A stretch of 64,000 nt of DNA from Hyphochytrium catenoides (GCA_900088475.1 FLMG01002562.1:83398-147397), one strand, 5' to 3'; shown: positions 8,026-57,632, counted from the stretch's first letter. The notes: generated by a model not told the origin, from the letters alone. Made by a program: numbers and translations.

Positions 8026-8030
<5 letters not shown>

Positions 8031-8093: not shown

Positions 8094-8099
<6 letters not shown>

Positions 8100-8847
8100 A
8101 CGAGGTAGGAAGGCATGCATTGAAACTTTCATTCAAGCTTTCTTGTGAGCTTTTACCTTCCAGAATATATATATATTAATAAAGAAAGTGTGCTGTTTTA
8201 TGGTTTTGAGTACAAACCTGTCAGAATTTGCCCCTTTCTATCTTCAAAGATAAAATTTATTAGGACTATTCTGATAAAAAAGTACAAAACCTTTGTTAGG
8301 TAATTTTTCCCAGCGCAATGTTTCATAGCGGGGGTTGGGTCCCAAGATCTTGCCTTCCGTCTAAATAAAGGACGCATTTCTATTGCGGCAGGCTAGGCCA
8401 TAGACGTGACAGAGTGGGGGCCGTTAGGATCGTAGAGAGCCAAGGATTGGCCGTAAATAAAAAGACGGCAGAAGACCAAGGGACAGGAGTGTTTGCGGTT
8501 AAGGATTAGACACTTTGAGGCTTTACTTTGTTAGGTATTTCCATACGGCGGCGAAGGATAGAGAGGAGGTCGAACTAGAAGTAATAGACCTCTGAACCTC
8601 TAAAACCCAAATCCTAATCAGACAGAGCTATGAGAGATATATGACTGGTGAGATTAGCCCAAGCACAAAGTGTATAAGGTACAAGAGCGGTACAGACAGA
8701 GGACAAAGGAGACACGAGAAGGCCCCAAGAATCCGTTACAAGTCGTCTCAAACTGCCAAAAGCCGCCAAAATTTTCTTCCCCCTCTGAAAACCACTGTCG
8801 TGCCAAGCAAAATGTTGCCCTCTCTTTCTCGGGCTCCTTTCTCTCTT

Positions 8848-14431: not shown

Positions 14432-15498
14432 ATGAGGTAGCTCCACAAGTCGGCAGATTGCAGAATGAAGAGAAAGCCCTTCCAGATTTTTTTGAGACCA
14501 ACCCCAAAGAGCAGATCACCAGAACACGACACCCACTAAAGGACCGAGAGGTTGTAACGTGGCAAGCAGTCACCGCGATGCGAAGCGAACAGAAGGAGGA
14601 GCAGAGGACTTGTCACTGTGAAGCTTTATGCGGGGTGTTCGTACAAAGTATTGGGACCGTGCTGCGGGCAGCTTCAGAGCTGATCAGCTGTGAGCTGTGA
14701 GGAACTTGACCAAGCCCAAGGGCCAAGGAAGGTGAAGGAAAACACTGCCACTCCCCACAGTCCTCTCTACCGTTCGGTGGGTGTTCTGATGAGAAGCAGG
14801 GGATGGCGACATGTGCGACAGGGGACAAAGGTACAAGACAGAGCGCAGAACCATTACAGATAAAGACTAGCGCCGCTTCGGGGAGATATTCAAGAAAGTA
14901 GACTTGGACGATTGTGACAAGAAAAATGGAAACCATCACTCATCTGAAAGAAACACATGCACCTTTGCAAAGATGCATCGTGGTACACTCCAGTAAAGAC
15001 TTCTCTACGAGTAGGAATGAAAATATTGAAGGCTTCGTGGCAGCAAACTGAAACAAAGTTTCCAATATACCTTGATTACCGTTAGCCGTGATCTTTTGAG
15101 ATCAACGTAACGATAACTACATAAATCCGTTGTGGCAGAAGACAGTGAAGCGGTGCCGCGAATGGCGATCATCATTCTGTCCTGCCGACTCTGATGAAGC
15201 GCTGGAAGGAAGGCGCTGCCCTTGCTGATGATGGAGATAATAAGGACCATGGCTGTTGATGGCAGACAAGTGCCATCCTCACTTGGCAGTGCAGAGGGTT
15301 GCTATGTCAGTCGCCTCCATGGACACTCTCTCTCTGTGGGCTTCAAGGCACCAAGACTTTCAGTCAGGTCTATTCTATTATTGCTAAACCTGGCAACGCT
15401 ACGGGTAGTGCAAGGTTACGCTGTCAAGCACTTCGCGACTAAGCGACGCCAACTTCACACTGCGTGGATGCTGTGACACAGTCACTGCTACGTTGGCA

Positions 15499-34337: not shown

Positions 34338-37300
34338 ATGGAGGACAAACGTGAATCTTTGGCTTCGGCCAACGAGCGACGGTCGCTGCTATCCACATCT
34401 GTAGTATCTGACCCTGCGATGTACTTCACTCCCGATGAAGATAGTTATCTCTCAAAGGTGGCAAGGAGTGACTCGTCTCCTCAGTTGGAGGGAGAGCGAG
34501 ATACGCTTACTAAGACACCTGTGTCTCCAATGGAGAAAGGCAGGAGTAGTGCCCCGCAATCTCTCTCTCCGTCTGCTAGAGAGAGAATCCGAATGTTCCA
34601 GAGCCATTTCTCGTTGGAGGGCGTCTCTCCTTCTCTGCCGACAGACTACTCTATGATGGCTAGTCCCGACCCAGAAGAGCTACGAGGCAACAAATACCTT
34701 GGTGAGAAGAGCGTGCTAAGAAGGAGACACACGAGAAGGTCTCTGCAGAGCTCCAGCTTGCCAGGTTCACCACCGTATGAAGAATATCAGGGTTCCGCTC
34801 CTATGTCACCCTCGTGGAATAGGTCTAACCGTCTCAGGTCTGATACTGCCTCCGTCCACTAAGTCTTGGTGCCTCATCTTATGATCATGGAACTGTCCGG
34901 CCTTGGTCCTCTTCTTTCGTTCCTAGTCTTCCACTATTCTTACCTCATGTTTCCACTTCTCAACTAACCTATGTGGTGCGAAGACTCCATTGCCTAGTGC
35001 TTCCCTGAGGGTAAACTAACTTTTGGTTCCCTCGACTATAGAGACAGCAAGGGAAACTTGACGAAGGGTAGCATGAGCGTAGGAGAAAGAGTGGCAAGCT
35101 GGCTCTTTCCTTTACTCCTGCTGTTCTCTATTTTCATAGGACCTGACGCTATCACCATGCTATACACCTTGGGCTACGTGTTCGACGTCTTTGTACCGCA
35201 ACGACGCGTATGGCTATGCATAGCTCTTGCGATAATCTCCCTCGTTTCTTTGGCACTCTCTGTCGCTCTTCAGGTGCTCTATGCAGTGAAAGGGGAAGAT
35301 TATGTCCTCTATGGCTCTCAGACTGTATGGGTTATCTTCGGACTAGGCCCTGCGACGAACGTCTGGGCTTACATCCAAGCTTTTCTTCCCGACGTCTTTG
35401 CTCTTTTAGCAGCCGTCATCTTTTTGGCGCTAGGCAGGAAACTACAGCCTGTGCTGCACCTTCCGGGCCTAAATCCTACCGAAGCCTCTATCTTTACGGT
35501 GTGGTGGGCCAACACTGTTGGTTCTCTGATTATCCCCATCATCGCTATGTCTCAGCCTGGGCCGGTGCAACTTGTCTTCTTTATTATCTTTATCCTTCTT
35601 GTCCTCCGTGCCCTTTACTCAGCCTTTGTCATAGAGAGCACGGGAAGATATATCCGCTCTAGCGACCGCTTCTTCCTCTTCCCTATTCGGCTCTGTCTGC
35701 CGCTGGTGCTGTATAATGTCACCACATTGCTATTCCTGTAAGTACCGAAGTCTCATTCTTCAGGTTGCTTCTTTTAGCGTCTCCATCAGTGAGGGTCTGT
35801 TTTCCCTCCGTCTCCATCTCGACGTCGCTTACTCTTCAGCATCTCTGTTCTTTTCTCATTATTTATGCGTGTTTCGCTTATCTTAGTCGAGATCTTGGCA
35901 CGCCTCTCTTCGTTCCATGACTGTGCGACTGGTGGTTATTCTGTCTCATCCGTCTAATTAAGAAATCTTGACAACTGACATGTCTTTTCGTTCCATCCAT
36001 ATGCTCCTGGTGGTTACTCTGTTTCCTCTGCCTATCTAGGAATGTTTGCTTCTTTCCTTACATAAGGAACCTCGACATTCTCGAAGACAAGTTAGAGTAC
36101 ATGGGCCTTTCGTCTGATGTTAAGGTAAGTGAGAGATTGAAAGAAAGGAAAAGTTTGCTACGCTCTTGTCCCGACTCGGCTGTGTTCACTTTCCCCCGTC
36201 TTGATCTCTGGCTAAGATATCTATCTATCTTGGTTGCCTTAACCAGGGGGTTCTTTAACCTCTGCCTTCCCTCTTTTCTCTCTTCACTCCAGTCGTGGTC
36301 CGTCTTTGTCTACGTGGGCGGCTCGATTGTGATGTCAGAGTGCTTCGCTTTCTCAGCGCGCTGCTGGTGGTCTCAAGGCAGGAAGATTCTCGAGTTCCCT
36401 CCACGGAGAAAGAGCAGAGGATACGCTTTACCGACGGTGGCCATGGTCGGACGCTCTCGTCTCGCACCTGCGACACCTTCGCTGGTCTCTTCTCCATTCC
36501 GTGCCCAACCCAATAGAGGGTTGGACGCGAGAAGGAGCTCAGAGTACTATGACGCGACGCACACTCCAATGGCAGTTGACGCAGGAGAGGACGATGAGAT
36601 ACAGACGCCACGCATAGATCTAGAAGGCGCAAGCGATGTTGATGAGGATTATTCAGAAGACGAAGAAGAAGAAAATTTAGAGGAAGAGCTAGGAAGAACC
36701 GGCATCCTCTACTACACAGTGGCCACCATTCACAAGGATATCTCCCGTCTTCCGCTTAGCGTGAAAATCATATTCGATAGGAGAGGAAGATTCCTGAGTG
36801 GCATGCTTTGCCTTCTTTGGGCGACGATCTTTCCTTCATATCTCTCCCTCGCCCTCCTTCTCTCCGGTTTCTTCATCTTCATCTTCATGAATGTGGAGCC
36901 ATTCAGGTTCACTCTTCCCCTACTCACTATCTATTGCCTTACTCTTCTCTCTCTGCAATACGTCGTCAACTATTCCAAACTCAGCGATTCTCTCACGAAT
37001 GAGGTCTTTGACCGGATCACATACGACATCCCCTTTCTGGGGCTCATCGTGCAAACCTTCTTTACCTTACTCATCGTATGGGCTTCCGTGTACAATCTCA
37101 CTTATGCCGCGCTCATCCATGCCAAGTATCAGAATATTAGGTAAGAAGACTGTATAGGAGCGTCAGAGAGCCTTATTGCTAAAATCGAGCTTGTCCTCAG
37201 CGGAGTCGCTTTGCTTTGCCTTTCGCTCCTTCACTATCTATATCCAGTATGTACGGTCGCACATATAACCTCTACTGCCTTTGTTTTCATCTTTGGTCTG

Positions 37301-40300
37301 CCCGATTAGACAATGCAAAGAGCACGGATTCCCCGATGTGCTCGAACCTGGCGTGGAAGGAGGCTCTCCCAAAGGCTTTCACGATCCTCCAGATGTCAAC
37401 CAGTACCCCCGCTGGCGACAATGGACAAAGGACGCAAAGGAGATCCTTATGTTGCAAGTTGACCAAGTCATTCTTGCCATTCTCCTAGTCCTCGCCCTCG
37501 TAGGACCGAAAACAGCCAATATCCTGCAGGCTGTCTACGTTGGCCTCATCGTTCTCCTCGCCTTCCTCACGCCTCGGAACAGGAGAAGAGCGTGGCATAT
37601 TCTGCATTTCTACTCGTTGGGAGTGGTGGTGGCCGTATTCGTCTGGAATATTGTCTGCCCTACTACGACCACCACCACTCTTACGATTGGAATGGAGTGT
37701 TATGTGAGTGGAAGTGGAGCCACTTGGGGGGAGCTCTTCCTCTCCCGCTTCACGATCGCAGTGATTATGGTGCTGTTGGTAGGTACATTCTCTACCACTC
37801 CTCATTCTAACAGTTCCAAGTCATCAGTTGGCTTGCCCTATAGCTACGCATTTTCGCTCTACCTCTCTCTCTTCCTCATCTAACTAAGGTTGACCTTTCC
37901 ACAGTTAGGTCTGAGGCCTATTGTCTAGTGCAGTACAAGTCATTTGGTCTCATAATAACTCATGCTTTCTACTTGCCCTGGATCCGTCTGCCACCGTACA
38001 GATTGAGCTCCAAATTATCCTGTATAACATCATAGAGGTAGAGAAGAAGAGGAAGAAGCTAAGTAACCAGAACCTAGTAGAGGGCCGAGCCAGGGTCGAG
38101 GGTGATGACCATCCTTGGTATCATCTCTCTTCGCTGAAGGCCTTTATCTGGGTCTTCTACTCGGTCTTTGGCACTGTCTTCGTCTACGTTACCCTTCTTC
38201 TTTTGGCGCTCTCCAGTGAGACCGAAGTATATGACAGAAATGCGACTTTCGTTGGGCTCGGATTCCTTGTCTTGTTCTGCATCCTACTCACGCTACACCT
38301 GGGAGCCATACTTAAACATCCCAAGGGCTCTCCTGCTGTTCTCCAGTGGATGAGGTGGGGCAGAAAGCGGCAATCCCTATTCGTCCTTCCCGCTTTTTTG
38401 CTCTTGTGGTCTATTTCCTCCCGTTCCTTTGCTATACATCTCCTTTACTATGGAGCAGAATGTTGCGCTCGTTATTCTTGGAGCCTACAGTCCTCGGCTC
38501 CCCAAAATCGCACGTCCTATGTCACCTCTTAGGCCCATTCAGATCAGTTATCAGCTGGCTCTATGTCTAGAGCCCCAATTACCTTCCGCTCCTACTTCTC
38601 AAAGCTGAGCTCTGACTATCTGCCCTAACTAACGACTTGTCTTCTCCTTTCCTTCTTTTCATGCTCCAGATTACTGTTGCTGTACCTCGTGGTGGTCCTC
38701 CTCTGCCGTTATCTCTACCAGTTCAATGTTGTGGAGGAGTGGCTGACGGACCATTGGCCATGGACGAATAGTGTCACCTTGGCTGGCGTGGGCCTAACTA
38801 CATTTGATAACCTCTTCCTGGGATTGCTGCCTATGATCCTGGTACGATACTCCTTCAGTCATCTGAACCTGCGACTTTTCCTTTCTTCTGTTGGTCGATC
38901 TACTTTGCTCTTTTATGGAGTTATTTGGACTTAAAGACGGCTCCATTCCCACCTGGGCAGGCTATTCTGGTCGTCTATGGTGCGATATGCGCGTTGGCGA
39001 CAGTGCAAGCTGCACCCAGAAGAAGGAGACGGAAGAAGAGGCCTCGACACCTCCCTTCTCTTGACGAAAAGTGGGCGAAGATTTTTTTTGAGTTGCTTGT
39101 ATTGACAGGGAAGAGGCTGTTGGTATACCACAGTCCCTTCATTACTTTAGCCATTGCCGGTTTTGTGGCTCTGGCGGAGGTGAACGTAGCAAATAGTGTC
39201 TATGGAATCATGGCGCTGATGCTTTCCTTCAGCACGTCTTGGAGAGGTGAGACGAAAGGATTCTTCCCAGCATCAGACTTACCTAGAGATGTTGACATTT
39301 TTTGGTAATGCACAGGCGCTTGGTGGACCCTCTCGGTGCTGGCCTTCGCTTTGCTTCTTGCTCGTTACGCTTTCCAGTTCAACTACTTCGAGCCTGGAAA
39401 GAACTTCCTCAGTGCAGGACCAAACGCCTCCTGGTGGGGCTTTACAAGGCCCCCCACGTCTACAAATATAATGTGGACTGTTGTTTGGACTGAACTAGTG
39501 GTGCTTACAGTGACGTCTGTGCAACGAATGTAAGTGAACAAGAGAAAGAAGAGAAGAAGCCGCCCTTTCTTTCATGGAAGATCCAAATAGACTTAGCCCA
39601 AGCGTTTTTCCTGCTACCCTCTATTTTGCCTCGTGCTTGTGCTATGATAAGTGTCATGTCTTCCTAGCTCCTTTTAACTGTTTCCTGCTGATGTGACTCC
39701 TTCCGCTCCTTAATACCGCCTTACATTTATTTTTGTCAGTTCGCACTTGCTAGAGGAAGAAGTGATGGAAAAAGACCAGCTTCAGATATCTCGACGCCTG
39801 AAGAAGAGAGCACGGGTTGAGATGCTAACGAAAAGGTCAAGTAGAGAAGAGGCTGTCCTCAACCCTCTTTCGCCCACTTTCCAGAAGTCGAGTAGAGAAG
39901 GAAACCATATTGATCCTCTTACCCCCACTCCCTATGAAAACGGAGCCGCAAAGAAGATTGTGGCCTTTGACAGCAATGCGAAGATCCTTGCGACTCCCTC
40001 TCGACCAGACCCTACCTCGCCCCGATCGCCTATCTCCCATGAGGGTGGGCAAACGTTAGTTATAGGGGAAGAGAAGAAACCAGAGGTGGAGCTCCTGGTA
40101 CAGCGACCGTCGTCCTTCTTTGGCCAGCTATATGACGTGTACGACTGCCTTTTCTTTTTCTTTGTGGAGAAAGCAGCAGAGATCCGCCTAGAAATTTCGC
40201 AGGTAACCTACCATATAGCTCCTGCATCACCCTTCTATGATGCCCCCCACTCTTGTATCCCTAATCTTTGTCATTGGATGCATAGATCCTGCTGGTGCTG

Positions 40301-43300
40301 GCTGCCTTGAATGAGATGAACATATACAGCGTGGTCTACATGGGATTACTGCTCTACGTACATGCTATACCTCCAGAGGCCCTAAAGGGGTACTGGGGCC
40401 TATGGAGATGGATTGTACTGGTATGAAGGCGCTCTCACTTCTTTCCCCTCATTCTTTCCCTGTCTCACTTGCGTTTCCGCTCCATCGCCGTTATATCTAT
40501 GATGCGTTGGGCTTCCCAGGTCTGTCTCTGCTTGCAGTATCTTCCATACATTGAGATCATTCCATCGGCGGGCCTTGACAAGCAGACAACATGGCCTTGG
40601 AGCGCTCTCTCCTCCGCCTATGAGGAGTGGTTCGGCATCGGCGGAGCAGGTAATGGCTGTAGCAACTGTGTCACACCAACAGATTCTAGTGGGGTCTTTG
40701 AGACCCCTGAATGTCTCATCGTTTTGATGAGCTTATTATCTTTCGTCCTCCGGGTTGGTTCTCGCTTTGGCCTGGCTCCGCGCTTTCGCTCGCTCTAACT
40801 CATGCGGCTGGAATTCTCTTCCATTTCTAGGCTTCGGCTCCCCGAAGGACTTAATGTATGACCTACTAGTCATCCTCACACTTGCAACGATTCCTTCGGC
40901 GACGGGTATTCTCTCAACTGCCAGGTCGATGGGTAAGCCGTGTTCTCTTTTCGGCTTTACAAGCAACCACCTTTTCTTGGCTCCAAGTCTTGCTTGCAAG
41001 TTAATAGAGATATGTTCTACATCCTTCCCTCTGCTAGCATTCCACCCACTACGTTCTCCGCACTTGACTCCACCTCCCAGTCTCGTAAAACCATATAGCA
41101 GCTCTTTTACTTCGGCCGGGTCCTAGGGAAGCTTCACCTTCCTCGCTCCTCTTTGATTACTGATATACTCTTCCTTCCCTTTGATATAGAGGAGACCTTT
41201 CAAGCGGAGTATGATCCTGATATTGTCGATTCAGAGAGAGAGATGACGCGAGCGTCCTCATCTCCAGATGTGGTTGACATGATAGATATAGCAGTTGACA
41301 GAGCAGACACGGAGAGAACAGGACGTAAGCACTCTTTATTTTTTCTTAAACTTGCTGCTTCCTGGTCGAACAATGCCAGGTCCAGGTTTAAAAGCCCTAT
41401 GGCCACAACGTGCCTTCCTTGCTTTATACCCACTCCAGTTACACATTCTTCCCCTTTCTGACGCCTTAATCTTGTGCCACCTTCCTGTGCAGAGTCGAAC
41501 CATAGGAAGGGACGGCTTATGCGGGCTTTCACCCGGCAGGAGACTTTGTCCTCGCTATTCCTTCCAGACAGCTTGGCTTCTCTTTCGCACACACCAGTCT
41601 GCGGCGATTGGAATGACTTTACTCTTCCCGTACATACCACATTATGGGACTGGCTGCTATTCTTCATTTACGTGGGAGGCTCAAAGATAGTTCTCTTTCT
41701 TGGCTTCATCGTAGGGACACAGAGGATGGATCTTTTTCACCTGGCGTTCCTGATCCTCTCCATATATCTTCTCCTTCATGAGAACATTGTCAACTCTCAG
41801 TACGCAAATCACCTTGAAAAATCAGAGGAAGAGAGACGCAAGGCGACCGAAGTGCTTGCAACAAGGTCTAAGACTTCTCTTTGGAAGACCTTTAAGGCCG
41901 TCTTCTGTCGCCGAAGCCGAAGAAAAGAGGTAGCACCCACGCAGGAAGGCCGAGAAGGAAGTGAGAATGCACAGGAAGCAGAAGAAGAGGAAGAAGAGCA
42001 CCAATCTCGTGCCGTATTTGACTTCTTCAACTGGCTCAACATTGTATTTCTCAGCATTCTGGTCTTGTTCCAAGCTCCTTTCTTCCCTCTTCCTCCTGAG
42101 AAGCAGAACTGCAAGCCGGGTACTACTCTGCCAGACGATGAAGGTATTTGCCTTACCTATGCTAACGTGATTGGCATTGAGAAGTACAGCATGGACTACC
42201 CTGGAGGTAAGCGGCGCTCTGTGTGACATTGGCCTTGGACGTTGACCTCATCTTATTATCATTGTGGCTTCTCATAGTCGGCACCTCTCAATCCTACTAT
42301 GTAACCATCTCTGGATCGCTTTCTAAAACTCTCTAGGAACCTAACCAATGTTTGTTCTCCCCGCTCTATCTCAATCCTCGGCGGTGCCATTGGTCAAACA
42401 ATCAGCCCCAGTATACGACTCCTCCTCTCCTCTTCCATCCATTCTACTCTACATCCTCCTCCTCTTCCAGACTGCCGTGTATCGCAGTCGGGGCTATGAG
42501 TACGTAAGGGGATACTACTGCAGAAAGCTGAAGAGAGCGCAAGAGTACAGGGAAAAGATTGAGAGGAGCATGCTCTCGCGCCGTCTCTCCCGATGGATGT
42601 CAATGATTAGAATGAGAAGCAATCTGATCCATAGGTTGCATGAGATCATGACCAAGACAATGAGCGCTACGAACGAGGTACCAATTCCCTTCCTGCTCTC
42701 TCTTTCTTCGCCTATACCATAGTCCATCCAACCCATCTGTCTTGAATGACACACCACGCTTCAGTCTTTTGACCTATGTCGAGCGTCTCACTGTTGCTCC
42801 AGATGGCTACTTTAGTCCAAGTCCTGCTTGCTGCAGCTTTGAGTTACCCCTAACACTGCCACTGTTACGTTTACTAGTTGCTGGATTTGGCTTCAGGAGT
42901 GCGCAGCTCCCTACCGCCTGCCGCCCCCGGTCGACCCACCTGCAGCAATGCAACTGCCAACTCAATAGATCTGACTTGGGCACCTCCTCCGGCTCTGGGG
43001 CACAAAGTCCTTGCCTACAGAATTGTTAGACAGATATCTCCCTCAATGACTCTGCTGGGGGACTTCAACGAGATGATTCAGGTCGCTCCCTGGCTGTCTG
43101 TTGTTCACCTGTCGTTTTGTCTCTTTCGGTCTGTCTTAACAATCCCAAGCGGTCCCATCGAGGGCATGGTCTCTCTTCCTCCGAGGCTGCTTCTTAGTAA
43201 AAGACGCCCTTCACACGGTCAATCCGTTCTAACAATCGCTGATCGACCGCTTCTTTCACTTTGGAGCAGATCCCAGGCCACGTCACATCCTTCACTGTCA

Positions 43301-46300
43301 CAGGACTGCTACCTGATAAGTTTTACGAGTTCCGAATCTCTGCAGTCAACCGTAATGGCGAAGTTAGTATTCGATCCCTTCCGGTCCTTGATCCATTTGC
43401 TTTCGGCTATGGGTTCTTATCTATGAGGGCTCTATCCTAATGATCTGGGCATTGTGGATCTCATTCCTCTACCGATCCCGCCTGGACGTTCCTAACCCTT
43501 CTGATCACTTTCTCACGTCTTGTCTAGGGTCCGCAATCCCGAGCGTCCGAGCCCTTCCCTACTCAGCCAATAGACTTTGGAGAGACCGTTCAGGCGGGGC
43601 CCATGCGGCTCCTAATCCATGAACAAAAGAAGAAACGCGGCGTCATCGACGGGATAACGAACATAATGAAGAAGGTGATGCTACCTCTTATAAATCTCTG
43701 TCTGTCTGTAGCTCCCCGGCTGCTCTCAGTAGGAACTTAGAGTCGCTTTAGCTATGACATCCCTTGTTGCCATTATTATCCATCCGATCCTTACGCCCAG
43801 TTATTGTAGGAGCGCGTTCTGTTCCGCTTCGTGGTTATGGATCCGCGCCGTTTTTCATGGTACCTCGATGAAAAAAGCGCAGCGAAGCATCGAACAGAGA
43901 TGAAGAAAATAAGGGTGCCTACCTCTTTCAAGTAAGTACTGATCCTCAAACTTACGTCTCGATGGCCCGTACTCTGCCTCTATCCATGGTTCCTCTTGCT
44001 TTGTCGTCCAGGAACACTCATTATCCTCACAATTACCTAGAAAAACTAACGTGCTCCCTTTGATCTTTGTCCCTTCCCTTATGTATTGCAGAGTGAAATA
44101 TATCCACTCTGTTCACGTGCAGAGTCGGCCCGTTCAGTTTGATGAGAGTTCACCCTTCCAGCGCTGCATTGAGGTTCTGGTGAAAGACTCGGAGAAGGAG
44201 TCGGAAGTCCTTTATGTCATGCAGCCAGGTACGTCTCCTCTTACTTAGAAGACTGTTCCCTCATCGACGTTCTGGTCTGTCTTACTCTTGAACGTCAACG
44301 GGAACATCTCTCCCTACTTCCATTCTACAACGCCATACAGATATCTCCACCGTTGCTGGTCAAAGGTCTTTTTCGTCTCTTGGTGTTCCTATCGTTATTC
44401 TGCTCCTTGTTATTATCAGAAACACCGCTCACCGTTTCTGCATCTCACAGCCTCACTAACTCTGTCTGTTGCAGAAACTGACGAAGAATTGGAACAATGG
44501 AAGCGGATATTTGCTCGGCTCTCACCTCAGATGGCGCTAAGCGCAGAGCTGAAAGATCTTCGGGAGGAGATCTTTGCGGGAGAGGTTGGAGTCCGCCCTA
44601 TTTCTCTTTATCTTAACTTTTGTCCATCTGGCTACTCTTTCAGTTTATACTACTTCTCGACCTCCCTTCGGCTCTCTTCATTCATCTATAGACCAGTCTC
44701 ACTGACATGAGCGGCGTCTTCTGGCTGTGACAGGACGAAGAGGAAGATGCAGCGGACGAGAAGAGCGAAACTAGTAGTAGAAGCGGGAACTTGGAGGGTG
44801 TTGACTTTGAAGAAGAGGAAGAGAAAGACGAAGGACCGCCCGCTTGGAAGAAGGCGTACAAATTTTTCTACGTAAGTCTTAGGATACCTCGAAGCTCCTT
44901 GTCACTGCCCCATCTGCTCGTCGTATCTCTCAATCACTTCTTACGACATAGAGTAATATTCTTGCTATTCAACGCTGGCCCTATCGCCCTTTCCTAAGAC
45001 GGTCGAAAGTTGTTTAACGCCATGCGTCTTCTCTGGTTGACTTAACTTTACCCTTCCACAGGAGCTTCAGGATTCAGCAATTCGCCAAGAAGTCCCTCAT
45101 CCGGAGGACGTGGCATCCTTCCCCATTCGTTCGCTTCCCAAGCTTCTTCTGAACATCGTCAGGAGCAGGACGGAGTTTATTGTCTATGCTGTGGTTGTAT
45201 TGTCCTTCATATATGAGGTAGGGTCCTCCAAAGCTATTGCCTCTACCCTTTACCTAACACTTTTGAGTGCCATCACGTCATCCCAGTTGCCTGTGTTCCC
45301 CTTCCGCATTGCTCTAACGTCAATTTTTAAGTATGGCACACTTATGCACGGAGGAGCCCACCTCGAGTGTGAGGAGCTGGTTGCTTTCTATCTTTCCTTT
45401 CATATGCCAAGATGATTGCTCGGAAGAGTGCGTTCCTCTGCTTCTTTTCGCCCTTGATTGTCAGCAATGCCCTAACTCATCTCGCAGAATGATCTTCTTT
45501 CACTGATACCCGTCCTGATGTGCTTTGGCTATGCGATTCTGGAGCACCCACGTCCCAACTCTCATTTCTGGACAGTACTAATCAAATATGTAAGAGAATT
45601 GTCGCATCTTCCCTCTCTCTATAATATGGGTCTGTCTTTTATTAAGACTACTATGCCCTCGGCTCGATGAGTAGACTGTATGCGGAATCCACTGAGCACT
45701 GATTGATGTTTGTTTGTTCTTCCACTGTCAGAACCTGGCCGTACTGGCGATAAAGTACATCTTCCAGCTCCCGATCTTCTGTCAAAACACAACGAAGAGC
45801 ATGACCTTTTATCCCAGGTGAGACTTTGAAGGAGTCATGCCCCTGGTAGAAAGTACCAGCTCTGACTTAGACCAAGGACTGACTTTGAAGCCGTTCCTTC
45901 TGCCCCTCTCGTCCGCTAGCATTCAACCGTGGTGCCCTGAAGTTGCAGTATCATCGGTGGATAGTGGCAGCTCCCCTGTGCAAGCAATGGCACTGTTCGG
46001 CGTCTATAAATTTGATGGACTTCTGAATCCGCACATCAACTCTACGCTAAGGTACAGTGCTTGACATCCCACATCCCTGTTGCTGGCCCTAGCAATCACT
46101 CTTCAATCCTTTCAAAGCTGTTCACTAGCCATCTCTTTCCGGTGGCGCGATCAATGGGATACGAAGTACTCACCGCCAATGTGTTTTCTAACGTAGGGGA
46201 ATCATCTTTCCGTTCCTGACGTTTTTAGCCCTGCTCTTCCATCTCTCAGAGTTGGAAGTTCGAGGGTTGTATACCCCTCTAAAAGACAAGGACGTCTCAA

Positions 46301-49300
46301 AGGAGGAGGAGGTGGATAGAAGGAAAGAAAGAGAAGATTCACTGCTTGAGGATCTTCTCGGGGACTACCAAAAGGCCCTAGATGAGGAGAGGAATAAACA
46401 AGAGCTGGAGAAAGCCTCTCTGGCATCTCCTCAAAAGCCGTTGCTCACAAGGGATGATCATCAGAGTAGCGTCCAGGAGAAGGCCATGACGAAGGCCGTG
46501 CCTATATACGTTGACCACAATCGCAGCGCCAAAGCTTCAGGACTGCCAGAAGCGGTAGCGAAGCTGGTACGGTCCATCTTTGTAGATCTAGCTTAAGCGA
46601 GTTATCTCTTCTATGGCCTTTCACAATCCACTTGTCTGATTGTGCTTCTAACACACTCGTTATGACACGTCGCGGATTTCAGGCACCAAATGCCGCGAAT
46701 GACTACTTTGAGCGAGTCATTCCTGCACCTCCTTCTGGATGGGAAGAGGATATCGTGGCAGCCTCCAAGGGGGAGAAGCCAGGCTCTACGTATCGATCTC
46801 CCGCCACAGTCTTCCACATTATTATTATCGCCTACTCCCTTCTCTTCTCCAACATGTTTGAGGTCGATCTCTCGACTAATCCGCTGGGGCTGGATAAAAG
46901 TATCAACAGTTCTCTTTTGAACGGGATCGCCGTGCTAGTCGTGTGGTTCGAGGTAGGATGCTGTGAGCTCTCCACTTCCTCTACCTCTCTCTCTCTCTCT
47001 GGCCCCCATCTCTATTTGTACGATCCCTTTCCCTTTGTTCAAACCAGCCCTCCGTAGTCTACTCCTCGCTTAGTCGATCCGAACCCTAGAGCGAGATCAA
47101 CTAATACCCTTCCCGTCCCGTGACCTGCTCGCTCGTTCTACCGCAGGTGTTCTTCCTCTGCGCCGATGAGGTTGCCTATGTGGCTACCTCATTACGGCTA
47201 AAGCTTCTCATTCACTACGTCTACCTGCTGATGGTGTCCCTGATGTTTTTCCTCTTCATCCCACTCTATATCAAGACGTTCATCTGGTCGAGGTTCTCCC
47301 TTGTCCTGCTCTTTGTGCTGTACGCAATATCATTGGGCTTATCCTGCCTGCAGGTAGGTCTGCAGCCTATAAGATTTCTTTCCTTGGAAGTCTTCATGGC
47401 ATGCCTGCGTGACCCCATTATATGCGTCTCCGGCCACACAATTTCTATATATCTATCTCTTCCACTCTGTGCAGTGTTGTTTATATCTCTGGTGTGCTTT
47501 CAGCTATCNNNNNNNNNNNNNNNNNNNNCCTTTGAACGCGTCTTGCCTCAACAGATTCGGCACGGATACCGTGTCTTCAGGGGTAAATCTGACCTCCTGA
47601 CGGCTCGCGGCTTTTCAACCGTCCAGCAATACCGTCATGCAATCTTCATGGCGATCCCTTTTGCCTTTGAATGTCGATCGCTCTTGGAATGGACGTTCTC
47701 GAAGACAGCCATGTCCAGGTGAGTGCCTCCCTGCTCCTCCTTCATTTCATTCTCTATTGGCTCTAGCCCGCATCTCTTTAGTCTTCCTTTGCCGTGGGCC
47801 CTTGTTCCTTCGTTTAGCCTTTTAACTTCTGTCTTTTAACTTCTGTCTGAGAAGCCCACTGTGTGTCGCAAAGACATTTTGACCGGGTATCCTTGTGACT
47901 CTTTTTTATTTGCCTGCTAAAGAGAAGGCGTTAAGTCCTACTACCGTTCATCTACTGACTTCCACCTCTACTTCCATCAGGCCGATGTTCTTCATGCTAA
48001 AGGAGGTGTACAGCGAGATGTACCTCACAAAGTGCTCCATGAAAGACAGAATAGGAGACCCGCACTGGAAAGGTAAGCGAAGAGAATCATGCTTTGCCTC
48101 TAAGTTACAGGGCCAAAGTTGACACGTCTTTCTGCATCTTTCGTGGGTCCTAGGATTCAAGAAGCAGACTCCCATATCGAAGATCTTCAATGGTTTCTGC
48201 TGCTTTCTTATACTGCTGCTGATCCTCCTGGGCCCCATGTTGCTCTTCAGCAACCTTTCGCCGTCGTACGATAACAACAGGCTCAACCAGGCGGCGCTCG
48301 AGATAAGCATCAGGGAGGCAGGAGCCCGGCAGGCAGTGCCGCTCTTCACGAACGTGGTACGGAAGGGGACGCCAAAATTGATGCGGGGGTTTGTAGTTGG
48401 GCTTGGCTACCATTGTAGAGAGGTGCAGAGGGTGTCGTTGTCGTTTGGGTGGTAAAGGTGGTCTTGCTGGGACTCGCTTGTCTAAACACCCTTCTCTCCC
48501 CTTGCCGTCGTGCCCGCAGGTGGGCACCTTCGTGGAGGTGGAGAGTCTTCCCTATACGAAGATTTCGAGTTCGGTGGCAGAGATGGTAAGCATAGCCAAC
48601 AAAAGTCTCTTCACCTATCCTGCTTAGGGTTAGGCTCTTGCTTAACACAGAACTTGGGAGTTATGCGGCAGTTCAAACGCACAGGGTCATCTCACCGCTT
48701 GGTCTCCTTGCTTGCAATTGATTGAGCCGCTTAGCGGTCGCATGGCGCGGCTAAATCTCACTCTTGGTTGGGAATTGACTGTTTTGTTAGGTGCCTACCC
48801 CAGTCTTCTCAGATACTGTCTGGAGCGCTTCGCCACCTGCGAAGGAGCAGTTGGTTAAACGCCTTGGAGGCCCAGATGCGCGATTCGAGTGGGTCATTGC
48901 CTTGACATTTGTGAGAGACCAGCCGCCTCAGAACCAGCAGGTGAGAGTCAAGATGACTGTGGGTAACGAGACAGAGGAGATCAAAGGGACAAATGCTTCG
49001 AAATATGCGGGTGGAGACGCTCGAGGATGGAGTCAACAACCAGAAAAAATGCAAATGGGGGGCAGAAAGACCTGATGAGCAACACGACAGACACAGAGAG
49101 CGCGAACAAAAGAGCGAGAGCCAGAAGAGGGTTAGGAAGAAAGGGAGGGGGACAGAGGGAGAGAGAGAGAGAGAGAAGAGAGAATAAGGAGTGACCTACT
49201 GCAGTTCCGCTATTTCTGGCATTGTGATCTGCAGAGGACACTTCCACTTTCTGACCCGCCTCTGACACTGGACCAACGCTGTTCCAGGTCGCCATTGAAT

Positions 49301-50815
49301 TTCGCGCGGGTATCACAGCTGAGCAACAGGCTCGAATGGTGGAGATTGTGAACGCCTCGTTGGCGTCCTCTGCTTCCTATGAGTCGTCAGCGCTGATTGT
49401 TGAAGGCTTGTATAGACCCGTCATCTCCTTACCGCCTAATGGTAAGCGAGAGGAGCTTGATAGTCCTTGTTATGCTGCTGCTCTGACGTACGAGGGCTAT
49501 ATATTCCGCTCTTTCGCAAACAACACTCGATGAATGCTCCTCGTATATGTCCCACCCCTTCTATGGGAAGCTTCTAAGTCTATCATGACCTTCGTCGCGC
49601 TTCCAAGCTTGGGACTAAGTCTAGTGTATGCAGGTGACCCTTTCGCCTTGGATGACTATGCGCCGCTTAGCGTCTCGTTGCAGCTGATAGTTAGTAACGG
49701 CATTAGCTACTGGAGCGCCACGACTGTCAGGCCTGCAGCGTCTGCTGTAAGCCCTGAGACGGCAGTGTTAACTTGTCAGGACATAGGTAACGACAGCCGG
49801 GTTCCTGGTCAGAGTGATCGATCCTACGTGCTCATGACAAATCTACTTACTGTTTATCTCTTTATGGCCCCACATTGGCATCTGTTCGCTGCCTTCCTTG
49901 GGTCTCGAAGTTGAGTTGTCTCACTAAATCTGCCTGCACCTAAGAGCTCTTCGTTAACTGGTCTTCCCCTCCTAACGAAAGCTCGGTTTCTGGCCCGTTC
50001 CGCATGATATTTGCCCTGCAGATGGTAGTGTAGGTGCTGGAGTCTGTGTTATAGCCGTCTCGGCGGACGTCATCACAGGAGTGGCTACCACGCTGAGCAA
50101 GAACATCAATGGATATGGCATCACAGCTATCTACATCTTTGTAAGTCTTCTTAAGGGTGTTTTGTCCTCCCTTGCGGTCTCACAACGTGCCATTCTTCCC
50201 CCACCGATGTTCCCTTGTCGTTATCTCTCTGCCGTAACGCATTGACACACACGCAGTCACTGACCTCTTACCTCTTCTTCTCTCTTAAATCATCCCGTCC
50301 GCTCATCCCGGTAGATCATTGTCACTCTGGGTGGCTATGTCAATAAAATATTCCGCGGGAGCTTCCATCAAGTGATATACAAGGAACTCCCTGAGCCGGA
50401 GGCCATTCTAGACCTCTGTGAGGTACGCCATCAGACAAGAAAGATGGGAAACTGTTGTTAGGAGACCGCTCATTGTGGTGGCGAAGGATGGGAGAGCGCA
50501 TGCGACCAAAGTCTGTAAGGAAGTGAGGGAGAGAAAGCAACACACGGTGCAATCCTTCGTTGACGACAGAAAGCTTTATTCCTAGAGATAAACGGTGCGT
50601 ATACCCTGTATCGCTGACTGACCGGAGTCCGCCTTTTGTTTGCTTTGTAGGGCGTGTTTATTGCTCGGCAGATGACCTATATCGGACATCTAAAGGACGA
50701 GATGAAGCTCTTTGACCTGGTCATCTTACTGCTTCGGTCGCCGCAGCTCCTTCTCAGACTCACGGGAAGGAACAGCATCTACATCCCGGACCCCAAAATT
50801 ATCAAAGTAGACTAG
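34338..50815 (+). CDS. PIEZO: Piezo-family mechanosensitive ion channel with inserted FN3 and PH-like domains (over 30 exons)
   Basis: Many multi-TM exons joined by canonical introns. Repeat-B motif FGYAILEHPRPNSHFW, LALLFH..RGLY, QIRHGY, and the PFxxExxxxxxW signature PFAFECRSLLEW (about 47650-47695). Outer helix LILLGPMLLFS, cap domain, inner helix GITAIYIFIIVTLG and CTD IYKELPEPEAILDLCEGVFIAR..DEMKLF..LLRSPQLLLRLT, stop TAG at 50815. Confidence 0.95.
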
Positions 50816-53382: not shown

Positions 53383-55571
53383 TCAAGCTTTCCTCTTCTT
53401 CTTTGAGTCGCGTATACTCTTAGAGATGAGTTTCTTGGTCTTCCGCGCTCTCTCAGCTCTTCTTCCGCCTCCTCCTCCGCCTCCCGTCTGGCCTTTCAGC
53501 TTCTTCTTGCCCAAGATCCTTCTTGCAGCGCCTGCTACTGCTCTTACTCCTTCATGCTTGCCCCGTGTCTCTCCTCGGTTGGGTGCATCTTTCTTCGTTC
53601 TCTTTCCACAGACCTGGACGCGGATGCGTCTCTTTGTGGGAGCGAAGACAGACTCGTGAAGCTTTAAGGCATTGACGACGGAAGCTCGCTCCTGCAAAAG
53701 AGTTTGAGGAAGGTAGCTCTGACCGTCCTCGTACCATTCTTCCCCTGCCTCTCTCTGTCTATCTTGCTCTCTCTGTGCGCGTTGGCCTAAGGCCCCTTTC
53801 GCCTACACGCGCGTCTCTCCGTCTCTCTGTCTCTCATCCTCTCTTTTTCACTTGGCCTACGCTTCCTCCTTTTTCTGTAAGTCGAGTATGTACTAGATAT
53901 TTCTACCTTGAAAAGCACGTAGCCAAATCCTTTGCCCATGCCCGTCTCATTATCTCGGATTAACCGAACATTCTCGATCGATGTGCCCTCCGCCACCTCT
54001 GGCATATTAGAGTCGAAGAAGTTGCGAACCTAAGAGATGTCCATCACTTAGCGCATGGAGAGAACGAATGAAGGTGTAAAGCACGCATAGCGATGAGGAG
54101 GAGGACCGAGAGAGGGAAAAAAAGAGAGAGAGAGACAGAACGAGAGAGACAGAAAGAGAGGGTAGAAAGAAAGAGACAGAGAGAGAGAAGAGGAGAGAGG
54201 AGAGAGGCCGGGAGAGAATGAGAGAGAGAGACAAAAGAGGTCTATAGGCTGTCTAAGAGGACAATCACCGCCTGGTAACGCCGAGTAGTACTAGGAGTCA
54301 GAATACGAGGAGAGCCGCACGCTTGAGGAGGGAAAGGATTGCAAGGAAATCGAAATGGCATCGGCATCGAAGAATCTAACGAACATCGAAAACGTACCGC
54401 TTCTTCTGTGACATCGAAGGGCAGGTTGCCAACAAAGACAGAGCGCTTTGGGTCCATACTAGGCGAAGAGTAGTCGACACGTAAATGCTTTCCTTGAAAG
54501 AGCTAGAGACGGCACCCGAAGACAATGGAACCAGAGTGCATCAATGGTTGAGTCATAGTCTAAGCAGAGGTATATTGAAGGCATGATCAACAAGAAACGT
54601 TGAGAGTCGAGGCAGAGGCCATAGGAGAGAGAGACATGTAGGAGACTGAGGCAAGCGAAGATCAAGGGAAGGAAAAACAAGGATGAGTGGTAGCGGGAGA
54701 GAGAGGAGGAGAAGGAGAGGATAGAGGGAGAGTGAGAGCGAGAGACTGTTCGGAGGTGTGTCAACCCTTACCTCATTGTTGGCCGCCAGAGCCTTCTTCA
54801 CGGATTCCTTCTCTTTGAAGACGACATAAGCATTCATTGTGTCTCTATTAGGGTTCAGCAGACCTCTGTTTGCTGATACTTTCTTCACCAGCTTCTGATT
54901 GCCAGGCTGATCGATCGCTACCCCTAAGATTGGTACAGAACGGAGTCTCACCGACTGCACAGCTCCAAAGCGCTTGAAGAACTTCTCAATGTCCTTCTTA
55001 GAGGCAGAAGTAGGCAGATTCCCAACAAAGATTGTCCTCTCTTCCGCTTCAATCCCTGTGTCTGCTTCCTCCTTCGAGTCCACAGTGAGACCTGGACCCA
55101 CAGAGTTTGGGCTCTTCTCCGTGTTATTCTCCTCATTATCTTGCCCCTCTGCCTTTTCTTTATTTCTTAGCTTCTCTTCCAGAGGGTCAGCCTTTGCCTT
55201 TAGTTTGTCCTTCTTCTTTTTCTTGCTCTTCGTACCCACAGGCTCATCTTTACTCCCTATACTTTCTCGTCTCTCCTCGTTCTTCTTTAGGCCTTCAGAA
55301 CGTAGAAAGCAGTGGTTGGTGACTCGTAAGGGGTAGAAGATAGTTGTCAAGGACGATGACGAAGAGAGCAAGCCCGCGGTGAAGGGAGACACACACACAG
55401 TCACACACAGAGGGGAAAGAGGGAGAGAGAGGGAGAAAGAGAAAATTAGAGAAGAGATAGTGAAGAGAGACCAAGGCCAGACAGGAAGGGGTCTCAGCGA
55501 GGATGGCGAGCAGAGCAAGCGATGAAGAAAAGAGACAGACAGAGAGAGAGAGAGAGAGACAGTGAGTGAGT

Positions 55572-55627
<56 letters not shown>

Positions 55628-56016
55628 AGAAGTACAAGAGAGACTAGCAAGAGGCAAGTAGAAGCGCCGAAGATGAGTGAGGAACCTAGTACCGCTGGAA
55701 TCCTCTGTGTCTGCTTGAGACTGTGAAGGAGCAGGGGAAGGCACCTTCCTCTGCACCCGGCCAAACTTCTTTCGACTCTTCTCAAAAACGTCCGCCAAAG
55801 GGTTTGTCCCTGCATTATCTATTGCCTCCGGTGTATCATCGGAGCTCTTCTTGCGCTTTCTCTTTAGGGGCTAATAAGGTTACGCAAGTAAAAAGCCCGA
55901 GGATTGGAGAAGAGACGATCATCAGTCAACCGACAGGAAAGCTTGAAGGTATAACGAGCTGTCACCTTAGGAGAAGTGCTCCCCAAGGACTGCAGAAAAG
56001 TCGATATCTCCGCCAT
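53383..56016 (-). CDS. RBM34: Nucleolar two-RRM RNA-binding protein RBM34/Nop12 (multi-exon)
   Basis: RRM1 ERTIFVGNLP..VQSVRLRSV..NAYVVFK; RRM2 DPKRSVFVGNLPFDV..IENVRLIRD..GMGKGFGYVLFK; Lys-rich tail with HEGVRA. First exon MAEISTFLQSLGSTSPK (ATG 56016) splices in frame to RKRKKSSDD. Confidence 0.92.
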
Positions 56017-56650: not shown

Positions 56651-57583
56651 ATGACGTTTCGGAGTGAGGCAGTAGCTGTTCGGCGTCAATGTTATTGGGA
56701 TGAGTGCTGGAAAGAGACAGCCTACATGGAAGGAACAGGAGCCGCCAACACAGGTTCTAGACTCTAATGTGATAATTATTGCGCTGCCTTCCATATGCTG
56801 ATGTCCATCTCTCTTCTAGATCCTCGGTCAAGAAGCGACAAAGGAGCTAGTAACTCATGTCTGCCGAGAGATTGAAGCTATTGCCAGCTCAGCGTACGGT
56901 CCTTATGGGTCTCTCAAGGCCATCAGGATAAACCAAGCTAATCAACAGCCTGGCAATCTTCTGATCTCCTCTTCATCACGCTTTCTCTTCTCTGAGAACG
57001 TACTGCACTATGGATCTCCGCCGTCTAGGGTGCTTTTATCATTCTTGCAGACGCAGGTCAGCTCCTTCACCATTCTCTGCTGCACTTTATGGGCCCTCCT
57101 CTAAGAAGGCATTGCTCTTCAGATTGTACAGCAGGGAGATTGTGGGCTCTTTACCGCTATGTTTGCCTGTCGGTGAGTAAGCCTAAAGAGCCCATACACC
57201 GTTCTGCACTATCCACTAGGCTAACATTTTTCACTTTCTCACATAGACTGGTGCGTCGATTCTTGGAAGAGCTGGACGGCTCAGCCTCACGATCAGCTCA
57301 GCTGCAAGGTATACTGATGAGCCTCTGGGCCTCCGGTGCTATAGAAACCCTTGATCAAGCCGTCTCGCCATGTTTCTCCTTTCTCTGTCTCTCTCTCGCG
57401 TTCGGGTATCGCCCACCACCCGCTCTCTGTCTCTTTCTCTTCTTGTCCCTCCTTTGCCGCTCAGGGCCTGTCTTCCCCTCTGATTTCCCATGTTTCTCTC
57501 TCTCTCTCTTTTCCACTCATCAATCCCCTCACCCAACTGCCCATCACCGACTGTTGTCCTTCTCCATTTTCTCTCTCTCCCCC

Positions 57584-57632
<49 letters not shown>

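What the first reader, a model, noticed from the sequence alone, without database searches (positions are those of the whole stretch)
42878..44585. Piezo channel with a built-in fibronectin-III + PH module in the cytoplasmic beam/latch region
Seen: directly after the beam-like helix (YEYVRGYYCRKLKRAQEYREKIER..LIHRLHEIM), six exons splice in frame. They encode a full FN3 domain (PAAPGRPTCSNATANSIDLTWAPP..VLAYRIV..TSFTVTGLLPDKFYEFRISAVNRNGEGPQSRAS) and then a PH-like domain (VQAGPMRLLIHEQKKKRG..RFVVMDPRRFSWYLDEK..IEVLV..LYVMQPETDEELEQWKRIF). The normal repeat-B transmembrane unit resumes after it. Established: animal and plant Piezos lack these domains, the beam/latch transmits force to the pore, and basic beta1-beta2 loops of PH domains (here KKKRG) often bind phosphoinositides. 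Inference: a Piezo subfamily with its own lipid sensor and an elastic or tether domain, i.e. a PIP-regulated or cytoskeleton-tethered mechanosensor. Similar architectures may exist in other stramenopile annotations; I cannot confirm novelty.
Basis: partly seen in the sequence, partly recalled or inferred. Interest (0 to 1): 0.85.

Follow-up and report, generated by a model that had tools for sequence, protein, structure and literature searches.

The report
Piezo channel with built-in FN3-PH cassette
The window encodes a Piezo-type force-sensing ion channel with a folded fibronectin-III plus pleckstrin-homology module built into its chain just after the lever ("beam") helix; the module is real, but it is the catalogued and so far unstudied architecture of oomycete Piezos, here seen in a more distant, intron-rich stramenopile.

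Summary
Six GT/AG-bounded exons (42878-44584, 813 nt, phase 0 to 0) read in frame from the beam exon (42406-42677) into the next Piezo exons. They encode an FN3 domain (exons 1-2) and a basic PH domain (exons 3-6). The gene is a true Piezo: its downstream exons hit Pfam THU_Piezo1, THU9_anchor (with the PFEW motif) and Piezo_cap in colinear order.

The cassette is not a nested gene. In a metagenomic relative, the transmembrane helices, beam, FN3, PH and next helices lie in one uninterrupted 1254-aa ORF. Every oomycete genus returned shows the same order, with Pfam fn3 and PH above threshold. The spliced window module aligns to that relative across all junctions (E 7e-63). AlphaFold models of the orthologue match titin-type FN3 and classical PH domains.

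One Plasmopara record is even named for it. I found no paper that describes or tests it. The same cassette was already noted on other pieces of this genome (s1-326245, s1-349939).

What is new is a very divergent, non-oomycete member. Lipid sensing is plausible, since the PH is basic, but it is untested and the canonical phosphoinositide motif is incomplete. No RNA covers the cassette junctions in this organism.

The parts
34338..50797 (+). Approximate span of the multi-exon Piezo gene. The 5' end is not determined; the 3' end is the last Piezo_cap exon.
   Evidence: tblastn of oomycete Piezos is colinear from 37416 to 50797. There is a weak Piezo_TM1-24 hit at 36101-37144 and Pfam hits on the downstream exons.
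41603..42206 (+). Exon with the TM25-27-like helices and an acidic loop. Its 3' splice site is supported by RNA.
   Evidence: An RNA contig of run X1 joins it to 42406 across a 199-nt GT..AG intron. It aligns to P0002 660-790.
42406..42677 (+). Exon with the last helix of the preceding unit (TM28-like) and the long basic beam helix.
   Evidence: The RNA-supported acceptor is at 42406. It aligns to P0002 788-880. A family profile of this region hits only Piezo1 in the PDB, at residues 1168-1318 (E 0.25-0.38, weak).
42878..43081 (+). Cassette exon 1: end of the beam linker and FN3 strands A to C'.
   Evidence: Pfam fn3 positions 2-37, E 2.4e-4. 48% identity to P0002 880-948.
43270..43362 (+). 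Cassette exon 2: FN3 strands E to G.
   Evidence: Pfam fn3 positions 43-74, 29.5 bits, above the 25-bit cut-off. The intron before it sits at the same codon and phase as in metagenome locus L004.
43528..43674 (+). Cassette exon 3: FN3-PH linker, PH strand beta1 and the basic beta1-beta2 loop (KKKRG).
   Evidence: Family PH HMM alignment and MAFFT alignment.
43810..43931 (+). Cassette exon 4: PH beta2-beta3 with the invariant Arg, the conserved A-x-K-H-R helix and a polybasic loop.
   Evidence: tblastn to P0002 1024-1063, HMM alignment and near-invariant columns.
44092..44228 (+). Cassette exon 5: PH strands beta5-beta7.
   Evidence: HMM alignment and secondary structure of the orthologue model.
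44475..44584 (+). Cassette exon 6: PH C-terminal helix and the start of the linker.
   Evidence: HMM alignment reaches profile position 141 of 142. The orthologue model has the C-terminal helix.
44734..44871 (+). Acidic linker exon after the cassette.
   Evidence: In frame and aligned to P0002 up to residue 1200.
45062..45589 (+). Exons that begin the next transmembrane helical unit (THU8-like).
   Evidence: Pfam THU_Piezo1, 33.2 bits, above the 27.2-bit cut-off, on 45485-45589. Translation of 45062-45211 shows a hydrophobic helix.
47132..47719 (+). THU9/anchor exons (47132-47356 and 47531-47719) with the PF-x2-E-x6-W motif. The intron between them holds an N-run at 47509-47528.
   Evidence: Pfam Piezo_THU9_anchor positions 51-124 (33 bits) and 123-175 (48 bits). 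Motif seen. N-run located.
48791..50797 (+). Cap and C-terminal exons (48791-48979, 50315-50443, 50651-50797).
   Evidence: Pfam Piezo_cap positions 41-92, 226-261 and 263-297.

Best explanation
The window holds one long, intron-rich gene for a Piezo-type mechanosensitive channel subunit of a non-oomycete stramenopile. Its cytoplasmic loop that follows the beam helix is the loop that in mammalian PIEZO1 carries the lateral plug, latch and clasp. Here it contains a folded FN3 domain followed by a basic PH domain. The cassette is a constitutive, vertically inherited part of the protein, orthologous to the FN3-PH cassette of oomycete Piezos (shown, about 0.95). Most likely mechanism (inferred, about 0.4): three copies of the cassette hang under the central part of the trimer. 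The positively charged PH docks onto anionic inner-leaflet lipids, either phosphoinositides or bulk acidic lipid. The rigid FN3 links it to the proximal end of the beam. Membrane lipid state, or a partner bound there, would then bias beam movement and access to the intracellular ion exits.
For: - Exon structure and frame.
- The gene is a Piezo by Pfam on its own exons.
- FN3 by Pfam on the window exons.
- The spliced module aligns to P0002 at 31% identity over 394 aa, E 7e-63, across all seven junctions.
- P0002 is one uninterrupted ORF holding Piezo helices, beam, FN3 (E 1e-16), PH and the next helices, and the next ORF holds THU9_anchor and cap.
- The same order with PH above Pfam's cut-off is seen in Phytophthora (31.3 and 28.4 bits), in a Logan metagenome protein (P0004, 31.2 bits) and in Aphanomyces (25.5 bits).
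- About 45 oomycete proteins share it.
- Family HMMs hit the window FN3 and PH end to end.
- AlphaFold models have pLDDT 87 and 83.5. The FN3 matches titin and Robo3 FN3 domains (TM-score normalised to the target 0.8-0.9). The PH matches SKAP-Hom, ArhGAP27, GRK2, TAPP1, DAPP1 and Akt3 PH domains.
- The PH part is basic in all members (pI 8.4-10.6; window 9.35, net +5), with an invariant beta2 Arg and a conserved KHR helix.
- Metagenome locus L004 shares a phase-0 intron at the same FN3 codon.
- Plug, latch and clasp connect to the beam in mammalian Piezos: PMC9256749.
Against: - No RNA covers the cassette junctions in this organism. Only one 306-nt contig was found, and it ends in the beam exon.
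- No Pfam PH hit is obtained on the short window exons themselves, so PH identity of the window copy rests on orthology.
- The canonical phosphoinositide motif is incomplete, and the beta1 Trp that is near-invariant in the family is Pro in the window.
- The beam assignment rests on a weak profile match (E 0.25-0.38) plus position.
- Placement of the cassette under the pore is an inference from mammalian structures. No trimer model was made.
Confidence: 0.8

Rival explanations
1. The PH-like domain is a protein-binding module rather than a lipid sensor. Together with the FN3 it would bind another part of the channel (CTD, anchor or a neighbouring subunit) or a cytoskeletal or regulatory partner, replacing the animal clasp and latch contacts.
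For: - The canonical K-Xn-(K/R)-X-R motif is incomplete.
- Structural neighbours include protein-binding PH and PTB folds: GRK2 PH, which binds G-beta-gamma, and the EPS8 PTB domain.
- The closest FN3 matches in the PDB are titin's FN3 domains. Titin is an intracellular protein whose FN3 domains serve as protein-protein scaffolds (my own knowledge).
- The conserved residues include a non-basic surface (D, Y, E, S-P, F).
Against: All family members keep a net positive PH, with conserved basic residues in beta1, beta2 and the beta3-beta4 insert. That pattern is typical of membrane-facing PH domains. No partner is known.
Confidence: 0.35
2. The cassette is an optional, alternatively spliced block. 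It is 813 nt and phase 0 to 0, so skipping it keeps the frame. This would give channel isoforms with and without it, as PIEZO1 and PIEZO1.1 differ by the plug exon.
For: The whole cassette is phase-symmetric, and so are the FN3 block (297 nt) and the PH block (516 nt) separately. The precedent of Piezo1.1 is described in PMC9256749.
Against: In P0002 and in oomycetes the cassette lies in one continuous ORF with the flanking helices, so it is constitutive there. There is no RNA evidence either way in this genome.
Confidence: 0.1
3. The six exons belong to a separate nested gene or are mis-joined, and are not part of the Piezo mRNA.
For: Only the lack of RNA reads over the cassette.
Against: - The first exon has no start codon and the last has no stop.
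- The alignment to relatives in which everything is one ORF is colinear and gap-poor.
- The architecture is conserved in about 45 proteins.
- There is no sizeable ORF on the opposite strand.
Confidence: 0.02
4. The cassette faces the outside of the cell, with the FN3 acting as an extracellular adhesion domain.
For: Most animal FN3 domains are extracellular. My crude hydropathy count of helices was inconclusive.
Against: - The cassette follows the beam, and the region before it matches PIEZO1 1168-1318.
- It precedes a 4-helix THU_Piezo1 unit and THU9_anchor. In solved Piezo structures the four-helix units begin and end in the cytoplasm and the beam is intracellular (PMC9256749).
- PH domains and a polybasic surface are cytosolic features.
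- The best FN3 matches in the PDB are titin FN3 domains, which are intracellular.
Confidence: 0.02

Closest known systems
Oomycete Piezo homologues, for example Phytophthora infestans PInf_013599 (P0049), P. cactorum 'Piezo non-specific cation channel, R-Ras-binding domain' (P0046) and the Plasmopara 'putative pleckstrin domain, fibronectin type III, immunoglobulin-like, Piezo family' protein (P0053)
   Same: The order is the same: N-terminal blade, beam, FN3, PH, acidic linker, THU8, THU9/anchor, cap. The shared motifs are LPPxAP, TLLGDF, GEGP, R-[YF]-x-V-x-D, A-x-K-H-R and S-P..C.E.
   Different: The cassette is only 31-34% identical, and the window sits on a very long branch outside the oomycete crown groups. 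The window gene is broken by many introns of about 135-250 nt, whereas oomycete genes are nearly intronless. The beta1 Trp is replaced by Pro, and the PH is less basic.
Metagenomic relatives P0002 (locus L001) and P0001 (locus L004)
   Same: Same cassette in the same place. L004 shares the phase-0 intron in the middle of the FN3.
   Different: These organisms are unidentified and intron-poor. L004 has a long insertion in the PH beta1-beta2 loop.
Mammalian PIEZO1 and PIEZO2 (for example PDB 5z10, 6kg7, 8yez)
   Same: C-terminal pore module, THU9/anchor with the PFEW motif, THU units and a beam after TM28.
   Different: The loop after the beam carries the lateral plug, latch and clasp elements and disordered sequence, not FN3-PH (PMC9256749). 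No fn3 or PH region was matched in the PDB Piezo chains.
Titin-type FN3 domains and classical PH domains (SKAP-Hom, ArhGAP9/27, TAPP1, DAPP1, Akt, GRK2)
   Same: Same folds, as shown by Foldseek matches to the orthologue models.
   Different: These are soluble or scaffold proteins, not parts of an ion channel. The Piezo PH has an extra helix plus a polybasic loop between beta3 and beta4 and lacks the complete phosphoinositide signature.

Membership tests
Piezo channel family | Cap (C-terminal extracellular) domain, Pfam PF12166 | tested here: met
   Three window exons hit profile positions 41-92 (30.8 bits, above the 26.9-bit cut-off), 226-261 and 263-297, in colinear order.
Piezo channel family | THU9 + anchor (PF24874) with the conserved PF-x2-E-x6-W motif | tested here: met
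   Hits of 33 and 48 bits on 47132-47356 and 47531-47719. The motif P-F-A-F-E-...-W is present in the translation. The motif is defined in PMC3681921.
Piezo channel family | Repeated four-helix transmembrane units (THU_Piezo1, PF23188; Piezo_TM1-24) | tested here: met
   THU_Piezo1 scores 33.2 bits, above the 27.2-bit cut-off, at 45485-45589. There is a weak Piezo_TM1-24 hit at 36101-37144. The gene is colinear with oomycete Piezos.
Piezo channel family | Long intracellular beam helix after TM28 | tested here: inconclusive
   A helix of about 70 residues, rich in basic residues, follows a hydrophobic helix. The family profile hits only PIEZO1 in the PDB, at 1168-1318, but with E 0.25-0.38.
Piezo channel family | Homotrimeric, mechanically gated cation channel | not testable with these tools
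   This needs a structure and electrophysiology.
Fibronectin type III domain (PF00041) | Sequence match to the fn3 profile over the whole domain | tested here: met
   The two window exons cover profile positions 2-37 (21.7 bits) and 43-74 (29.5 bits; cut-off 25). Orthologues score 45-62 bits.
Fibronectin type III domain (PF00041) | Seven-strand beta sandwich fold | tested here: met
   The orthologue model has seven strands and pLDDT above 90. Foldseek matches to titin and Robo3 FN3 give TM-score normalised to the target of 0.8-0.9 and rmsd 1.6-3 A. The window copy itself was not folded, because a spliced sequence has no reference to pass to the tool.
Pleckstrin homology domain (PF00169) | Sequence match to the PH profile | tested here: inconclusive
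   The short window exons give no hit. Orthologues reach 25.5-31.3 bits, above the 25.1-bit cut-off. The window PH matches the orthologue HMM end to end at 86.6 bits.
Pleckstrin homology domain (PF00169) | Seven-strand beta barrel capped by a C-terminal helix | tested here: met
   The orthologue model has pLDDT 83.5. All 23 Foldseek PDB matches at E <= 0.001 are PH-superfamily folds: classical PH domains plus two EPS8 PTB-domain entries.
Pleckstrin homology domain (PF00169) | Canonical phosphoinositide-binding signature K-Xn-(K/R)-X-R in beta1-beta2 | tested here: not met
   The beta1 Lys/Arg and the beta2 Arg are present, but the -2 position is Leu in the window and in the relatives aligned. 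High-affinity phosphoinositide binding therefore cannot be assumed.
Stramenopile (oomycete-type) FN3-PH Piezo | FN3 then PH inserted between the beam and THU8, with the family's conserved motifs | tested here: met
   Of the near-invariant PH residues, the window keeps R, D, Y, E, A, H, R and S, and lacks the beta1 Trp.

The most novel reading that the evidence does not exclude
The FN3-PH cassette is the functional replacement of the animal plug, latch and clasp. It would act as a lipid-dependent cytoplasmic gate or brake attached to the proximal end of the beam. It would be ancestral to the whole oomycete and hyphochytrid-like branch of stramenopiles, as suggested by the shared mid-FN3 intron. 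Piezo gating in these organisms would then be directly tuned by inner-leaflet phosphoinositides.
Probability: 0.2. Interest if true: 0.75.

Novelty: new member of a known kind. Interest (0 to 1): 0.45.

Why it matters
Piezo gating depends on the beam and on the small elements that follow it. It is also known to depend on membrane phosphoinositides (my own knowledge: Borbiro et al. 2015), yet no dedicated lipid-binding domain is known in animal Piezos. A whole branch of stramenopiles, including major crop and fish pathogens, carries two well-folded, separable domains at exactly this position. That gives a natural experiment: delete, swap or mutate the cassette and ask what it does to mechanosensitivity and lipid dependence. 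The window shows the cassette is older than the oomycetes and is kept under constraint in a very divergent, intron-rich lineage. The architecture itself is already visible in public annotations, so this is a pointer to an unstudied feature rather than a discovery of a new kind.

Tried and rejected
- RNA support: two run searches found only one RNA-type run, with a single 306-nt contig. It confirms the upstream junction (42206 to 42406) but stops in the beam exon, so the cassette junctions remain untested.
- Whole-library HMMER search with the exon 41474-42226: only three hits. Two were useful (P0001, P0002). P0003 is a repeat protein and was rejected.
- The window's own annotated protein was not found in any protein search.
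- Pfam on the single PH exons gave nothing.
- Foldseek with the two-domain model was swamped by FN3 hits, so the PH was modelled alone.
- The metagenome scan failed with alignment A1. With A4 it gave one short FN3 fragment, L003, which was uninformative.
- A hydropathy count of helices for topology was unreliable.
- Apicomplexan origin was considered at first, on composition and repeats, then dropped. Prole & Taylor found no apicomplexan Piezo, and the neighbouring hydrolase's best named relatives are stramenopiles.
- Folding the window's own spliced module was left out, because a spliced sequence has no reference to pass to the tool.
- Literature searches for FN3/PH in Piezo of protists or oomycetes found no description.


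Full report
**Observation.**
- After an exon ending at 42677 come six exons with AG/GT borders: 42878-43081, 43270-43362, 43528-43674, 43810-43931, 44092-44228 and 44475-44584.
- They total 813 nt (271 codons), enter and leave in phase 0, and keep one frame open into 44734-44871 and 45062 onward.
- The first exon has no start codon and the last has no stop. The opposite strand has no ORF above 58 aa.
- The FN3 pair (297 nt) and the PH quartet (516 nt) are each phase 0 to 0 as well.
- Introns are 135-246 nt.

**The host gene is a Piezo.** Pfam on the window's own exon translations gives colinear hits:
- THU_Piezo1 at 45485-45589 (33.2 bits, above the cut-off).
- Piezo_THU9_anchor at 47132-47356 and 47531-47719 (33 and 48 bits), including the PF-x2-E-x6-W motif that Prole & Taylor call absolutely conserved (PMC3681921).
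- Piezo_cap at 48791-48979, 50315-50443 and 50651-50797.

tblastn of full-length oomycete Piezos is colinear on the + strand from 37416 to 50797. The cassette falls at the same relative place as theirs.

**What the cassette is.**
- Pfam fn3 hits cassette exons 1 and 2 at contiguous profile positions: 2-37 (E 2.4e-4) and 43-74 (E 8.5e-7, 29.5 bits). This identifies the domain and supports that splice.
- The four PH exons are too short for Pfam on their own.
- A whole-library HMMER search with the neighbouring exon recovered P0002 and P0001. P0002 carries fn3 (E 1e-16) and PH (22 bits).
- In orthologues the PH passes Pfam's cut-off: Phytophthora boehmeriae 31.3 bits, P. infestans 28.4, the Logan metagenome protein P0004 31.2, and Aphanomyces invadans 25.5.
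- The spliced window region aligns to P0002 813-1200 at 31% identity over 394 residues, E 7e-63, without breaks at any junction.
- HMMs built only from the relatives hit the window FN3 (104 bits, positions 1-98 of 98) and PH (86.6 bits, positions 2-141 of 142). None of 200 shuffles hit.
- AlphaFold models of the P0002 cassette (pLDDT 87) and of its PH alone (83.5) show a seven-strand FN3 and a seven-strand barrel with a C-terminal helix.
- Foldseek matches the FN3 to titin, Robo3 and contactin FN3 domains (TM-score normalised to the target 0.8-0.9). All 23 matches of the PH model at E <= 0.001 are PH-superfamily folds: SKAP-Hom, ARAP2, ArhGAP9/27, GRK2, TAPP1, DAPP1 and others, plus two EPS8 PTB-domain entries.

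**Not a nested gene.**
- P0002 is one uninterrupted 1254-aa ORF on a 59-kb eukaryotic metagenome scaffold. It holds Piezo helices, beam, FN3, PH, an acidic linker and the next helices. The following ORF holds THU9_anchor and cap.
- A second scaffold (L004) has the same gene in a few ORFs. Its short intron in the middle of the FN3 lies at the same codon and phase as the window intron between 43081 and 43270.
- Word-indexed searches with the cassette returned about 45 Piezo proteins from Phytophthora, Nothophytophthora, Peronospora, Peronosclerospora, Plasmopara, Hyaloperonospora, Bremia, Pythium, Globisporangium, Aphanomyces, Saprolegnia, Achlya and Thraustotheca. All have the same order. One is named 'putative pleckstrin domain, fibronectin type III, immunoglobulin-like, Piezo family'.

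**Position and topology.**
- The exon before the cassette encodes a hydrophobic helix and then a basic helix of about 70 residues.
- A profile of this region from 24 family members hits only PIEZO1 chains in the PDB, at residues 1168-1318, which is TM25-28 and the start of the beam. The E-value is only 0.25-0.38, so this is supportive, not proof.
- The cassette is followed by a four-helix THU unit. In mammalian Piezos the beam is intracellular and its two ends connect to the clasp and the latch. The lateral plug that follows the beam gates the intracellular ion exits and is removed in the Piezo1.1 splice form (PMC9256749).
- The cassette therefore occupies the plug/latch/clasp loop on the cytoplasmic side. 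My hydropathy count could not verify this independently.

**RNA and population evidence.**
- Only one RNA-type run held any of the region. Its single 306-nt contig joins 42206 to 42406 across a GT..AG intron, which shows the gene is transcribed and spliced as modelled just upstream. The contig ends at 42621.
- A DNA run holds a second set of contigs 90-95% alike. Among the differences listed within the cassette, 5 are exonic (3 synonymous) and 15 are intronic, and both indels are intronic. This fits purifying selection, but the list is partial.

**Mechanism.**
- The PH part is basic in every member (net +2 to +18, pI 8.4-10.6). The window copy is +5 with pI 9.35.
- The textbook K-Xn-(K/R)-X-R signature is incomplete, with Leu at -2. 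The family's beta1 Trp is Pro in the window.
- I therefore favour electrostatic or low-specificity docking to acidic inner-leaflet lipids, with the FN3 as a rigid connector to the beam's proximal end (about 0.4). A protein-binding role is a strong rival (about 0.35).

**Organism and phylogeny.**
- The window protein is absent from the protein collections searched.
- A neighbouring single-exon hydrolase has brown-algal best named relatives at 47-50% identity, against 37% for oomycetes.
- In a tree of beam plus cassette, the window sits on a very long branch (3.5 changes per site) outside the Peronosporales/Pythiales and Saprolegniales groups.
- Earlier notes of this scan call the genome a non-algal stramenopile with a kalium-channelrhodopsin. 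The intron sizes fit the 208-nt mean reported for Hyphochytrium catenoides (PMC5795050). This is a lead, not a finding.

**Novelty.**
- Reviews and surveys mention Piezo homologues in oomycetes without noting the extra domains (PMC4820453). No paper in the library describes an FN3-PH Piezo.
- The architecture is nevertheless catalogued in public records.
- An earlier follow-up in this scan reached the same verdict on another piece of this genome (s1-326245). I tested that claim independently here.
- The window adds a divergent, non-oomycete member and a shared intron that argues for an old, vertically inherited cassette.

Noticed in passing
window 42878-44584: The cassette as a whole (813 nt), the FN3 pair (297 nt) and the PH quartet (516 nt) are each bounded by phase-0 introns. 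This layout would allow domain insertion by exon shuffling, or frame-preserving exon skipping.
   Followed up: partly
window 43081/43270 and L004 about 9003-9077: The intron in the middle of the FN3 lies at the same codon and phase in the window and in metagenome scaffold L004. It is absent from P0002 and from oomycetes, so it is probably an old intron lost in the intron-poor lineages.
   Followed up: partly
window 47509-47528: A run of 20 N (an assembly gap) lies inside the intron between the two THU9/anchor exons. It does not touch coding sequence.
   Followed up: yes
window 41200-47100 (DNA run X2): The DNA run holds a second set of contigs 90-95% alike across the gene (71 of 91 contigs). 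This is a diverged haplotype or a paralogue. The differences listed are mostly intronic. Earlier notes report the same cassette on two other pieces of this genome.
   Followed up: partly
L001 16882-18624 and L004 13975-16247: In both metagenomic scaffolds the Piezo gene is followed by two homeobox (Homeobox_KN) genes. This conserved synteny suggests the two unidentified organisms are related.
   Followed up: no
Tree (P0062, P0069, P0018 versus P0064-P0068, P0071): Saprolegnian oomycetes carry at least two old paralogue groups of the cassette-bearing Piezo. Aphanomyces invadans appears in both.
   Followed up: no
P0074, P0075 (Phytophthora kernoviae): These two gene models match only 11% of the query (the beam end) and lack fn3 and PH in the precomputed Pfam list. 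They are probably truncated or mis-joined models rather than real loss of the cassette.
   Followed up: no
window 13223-14446 (-): This is a single-exon alpha/beta hydrolase of the ABHD4/5 or cardiolipin-phospholipase type. Its best named relatives are brown algae (47-50%), not oomycetes (37%). One unnamed Logan protein is 65% identical.
   Followed up: partly
window, many places (for example 7256-8148, 54553-55815, 57089-57982): Long (CT)n/(GA)n tracts give SLSL and RERE pseudo-ORFs throughout the window. I first mistook this compositional feature for a coccidian signature.
   Followed up: no
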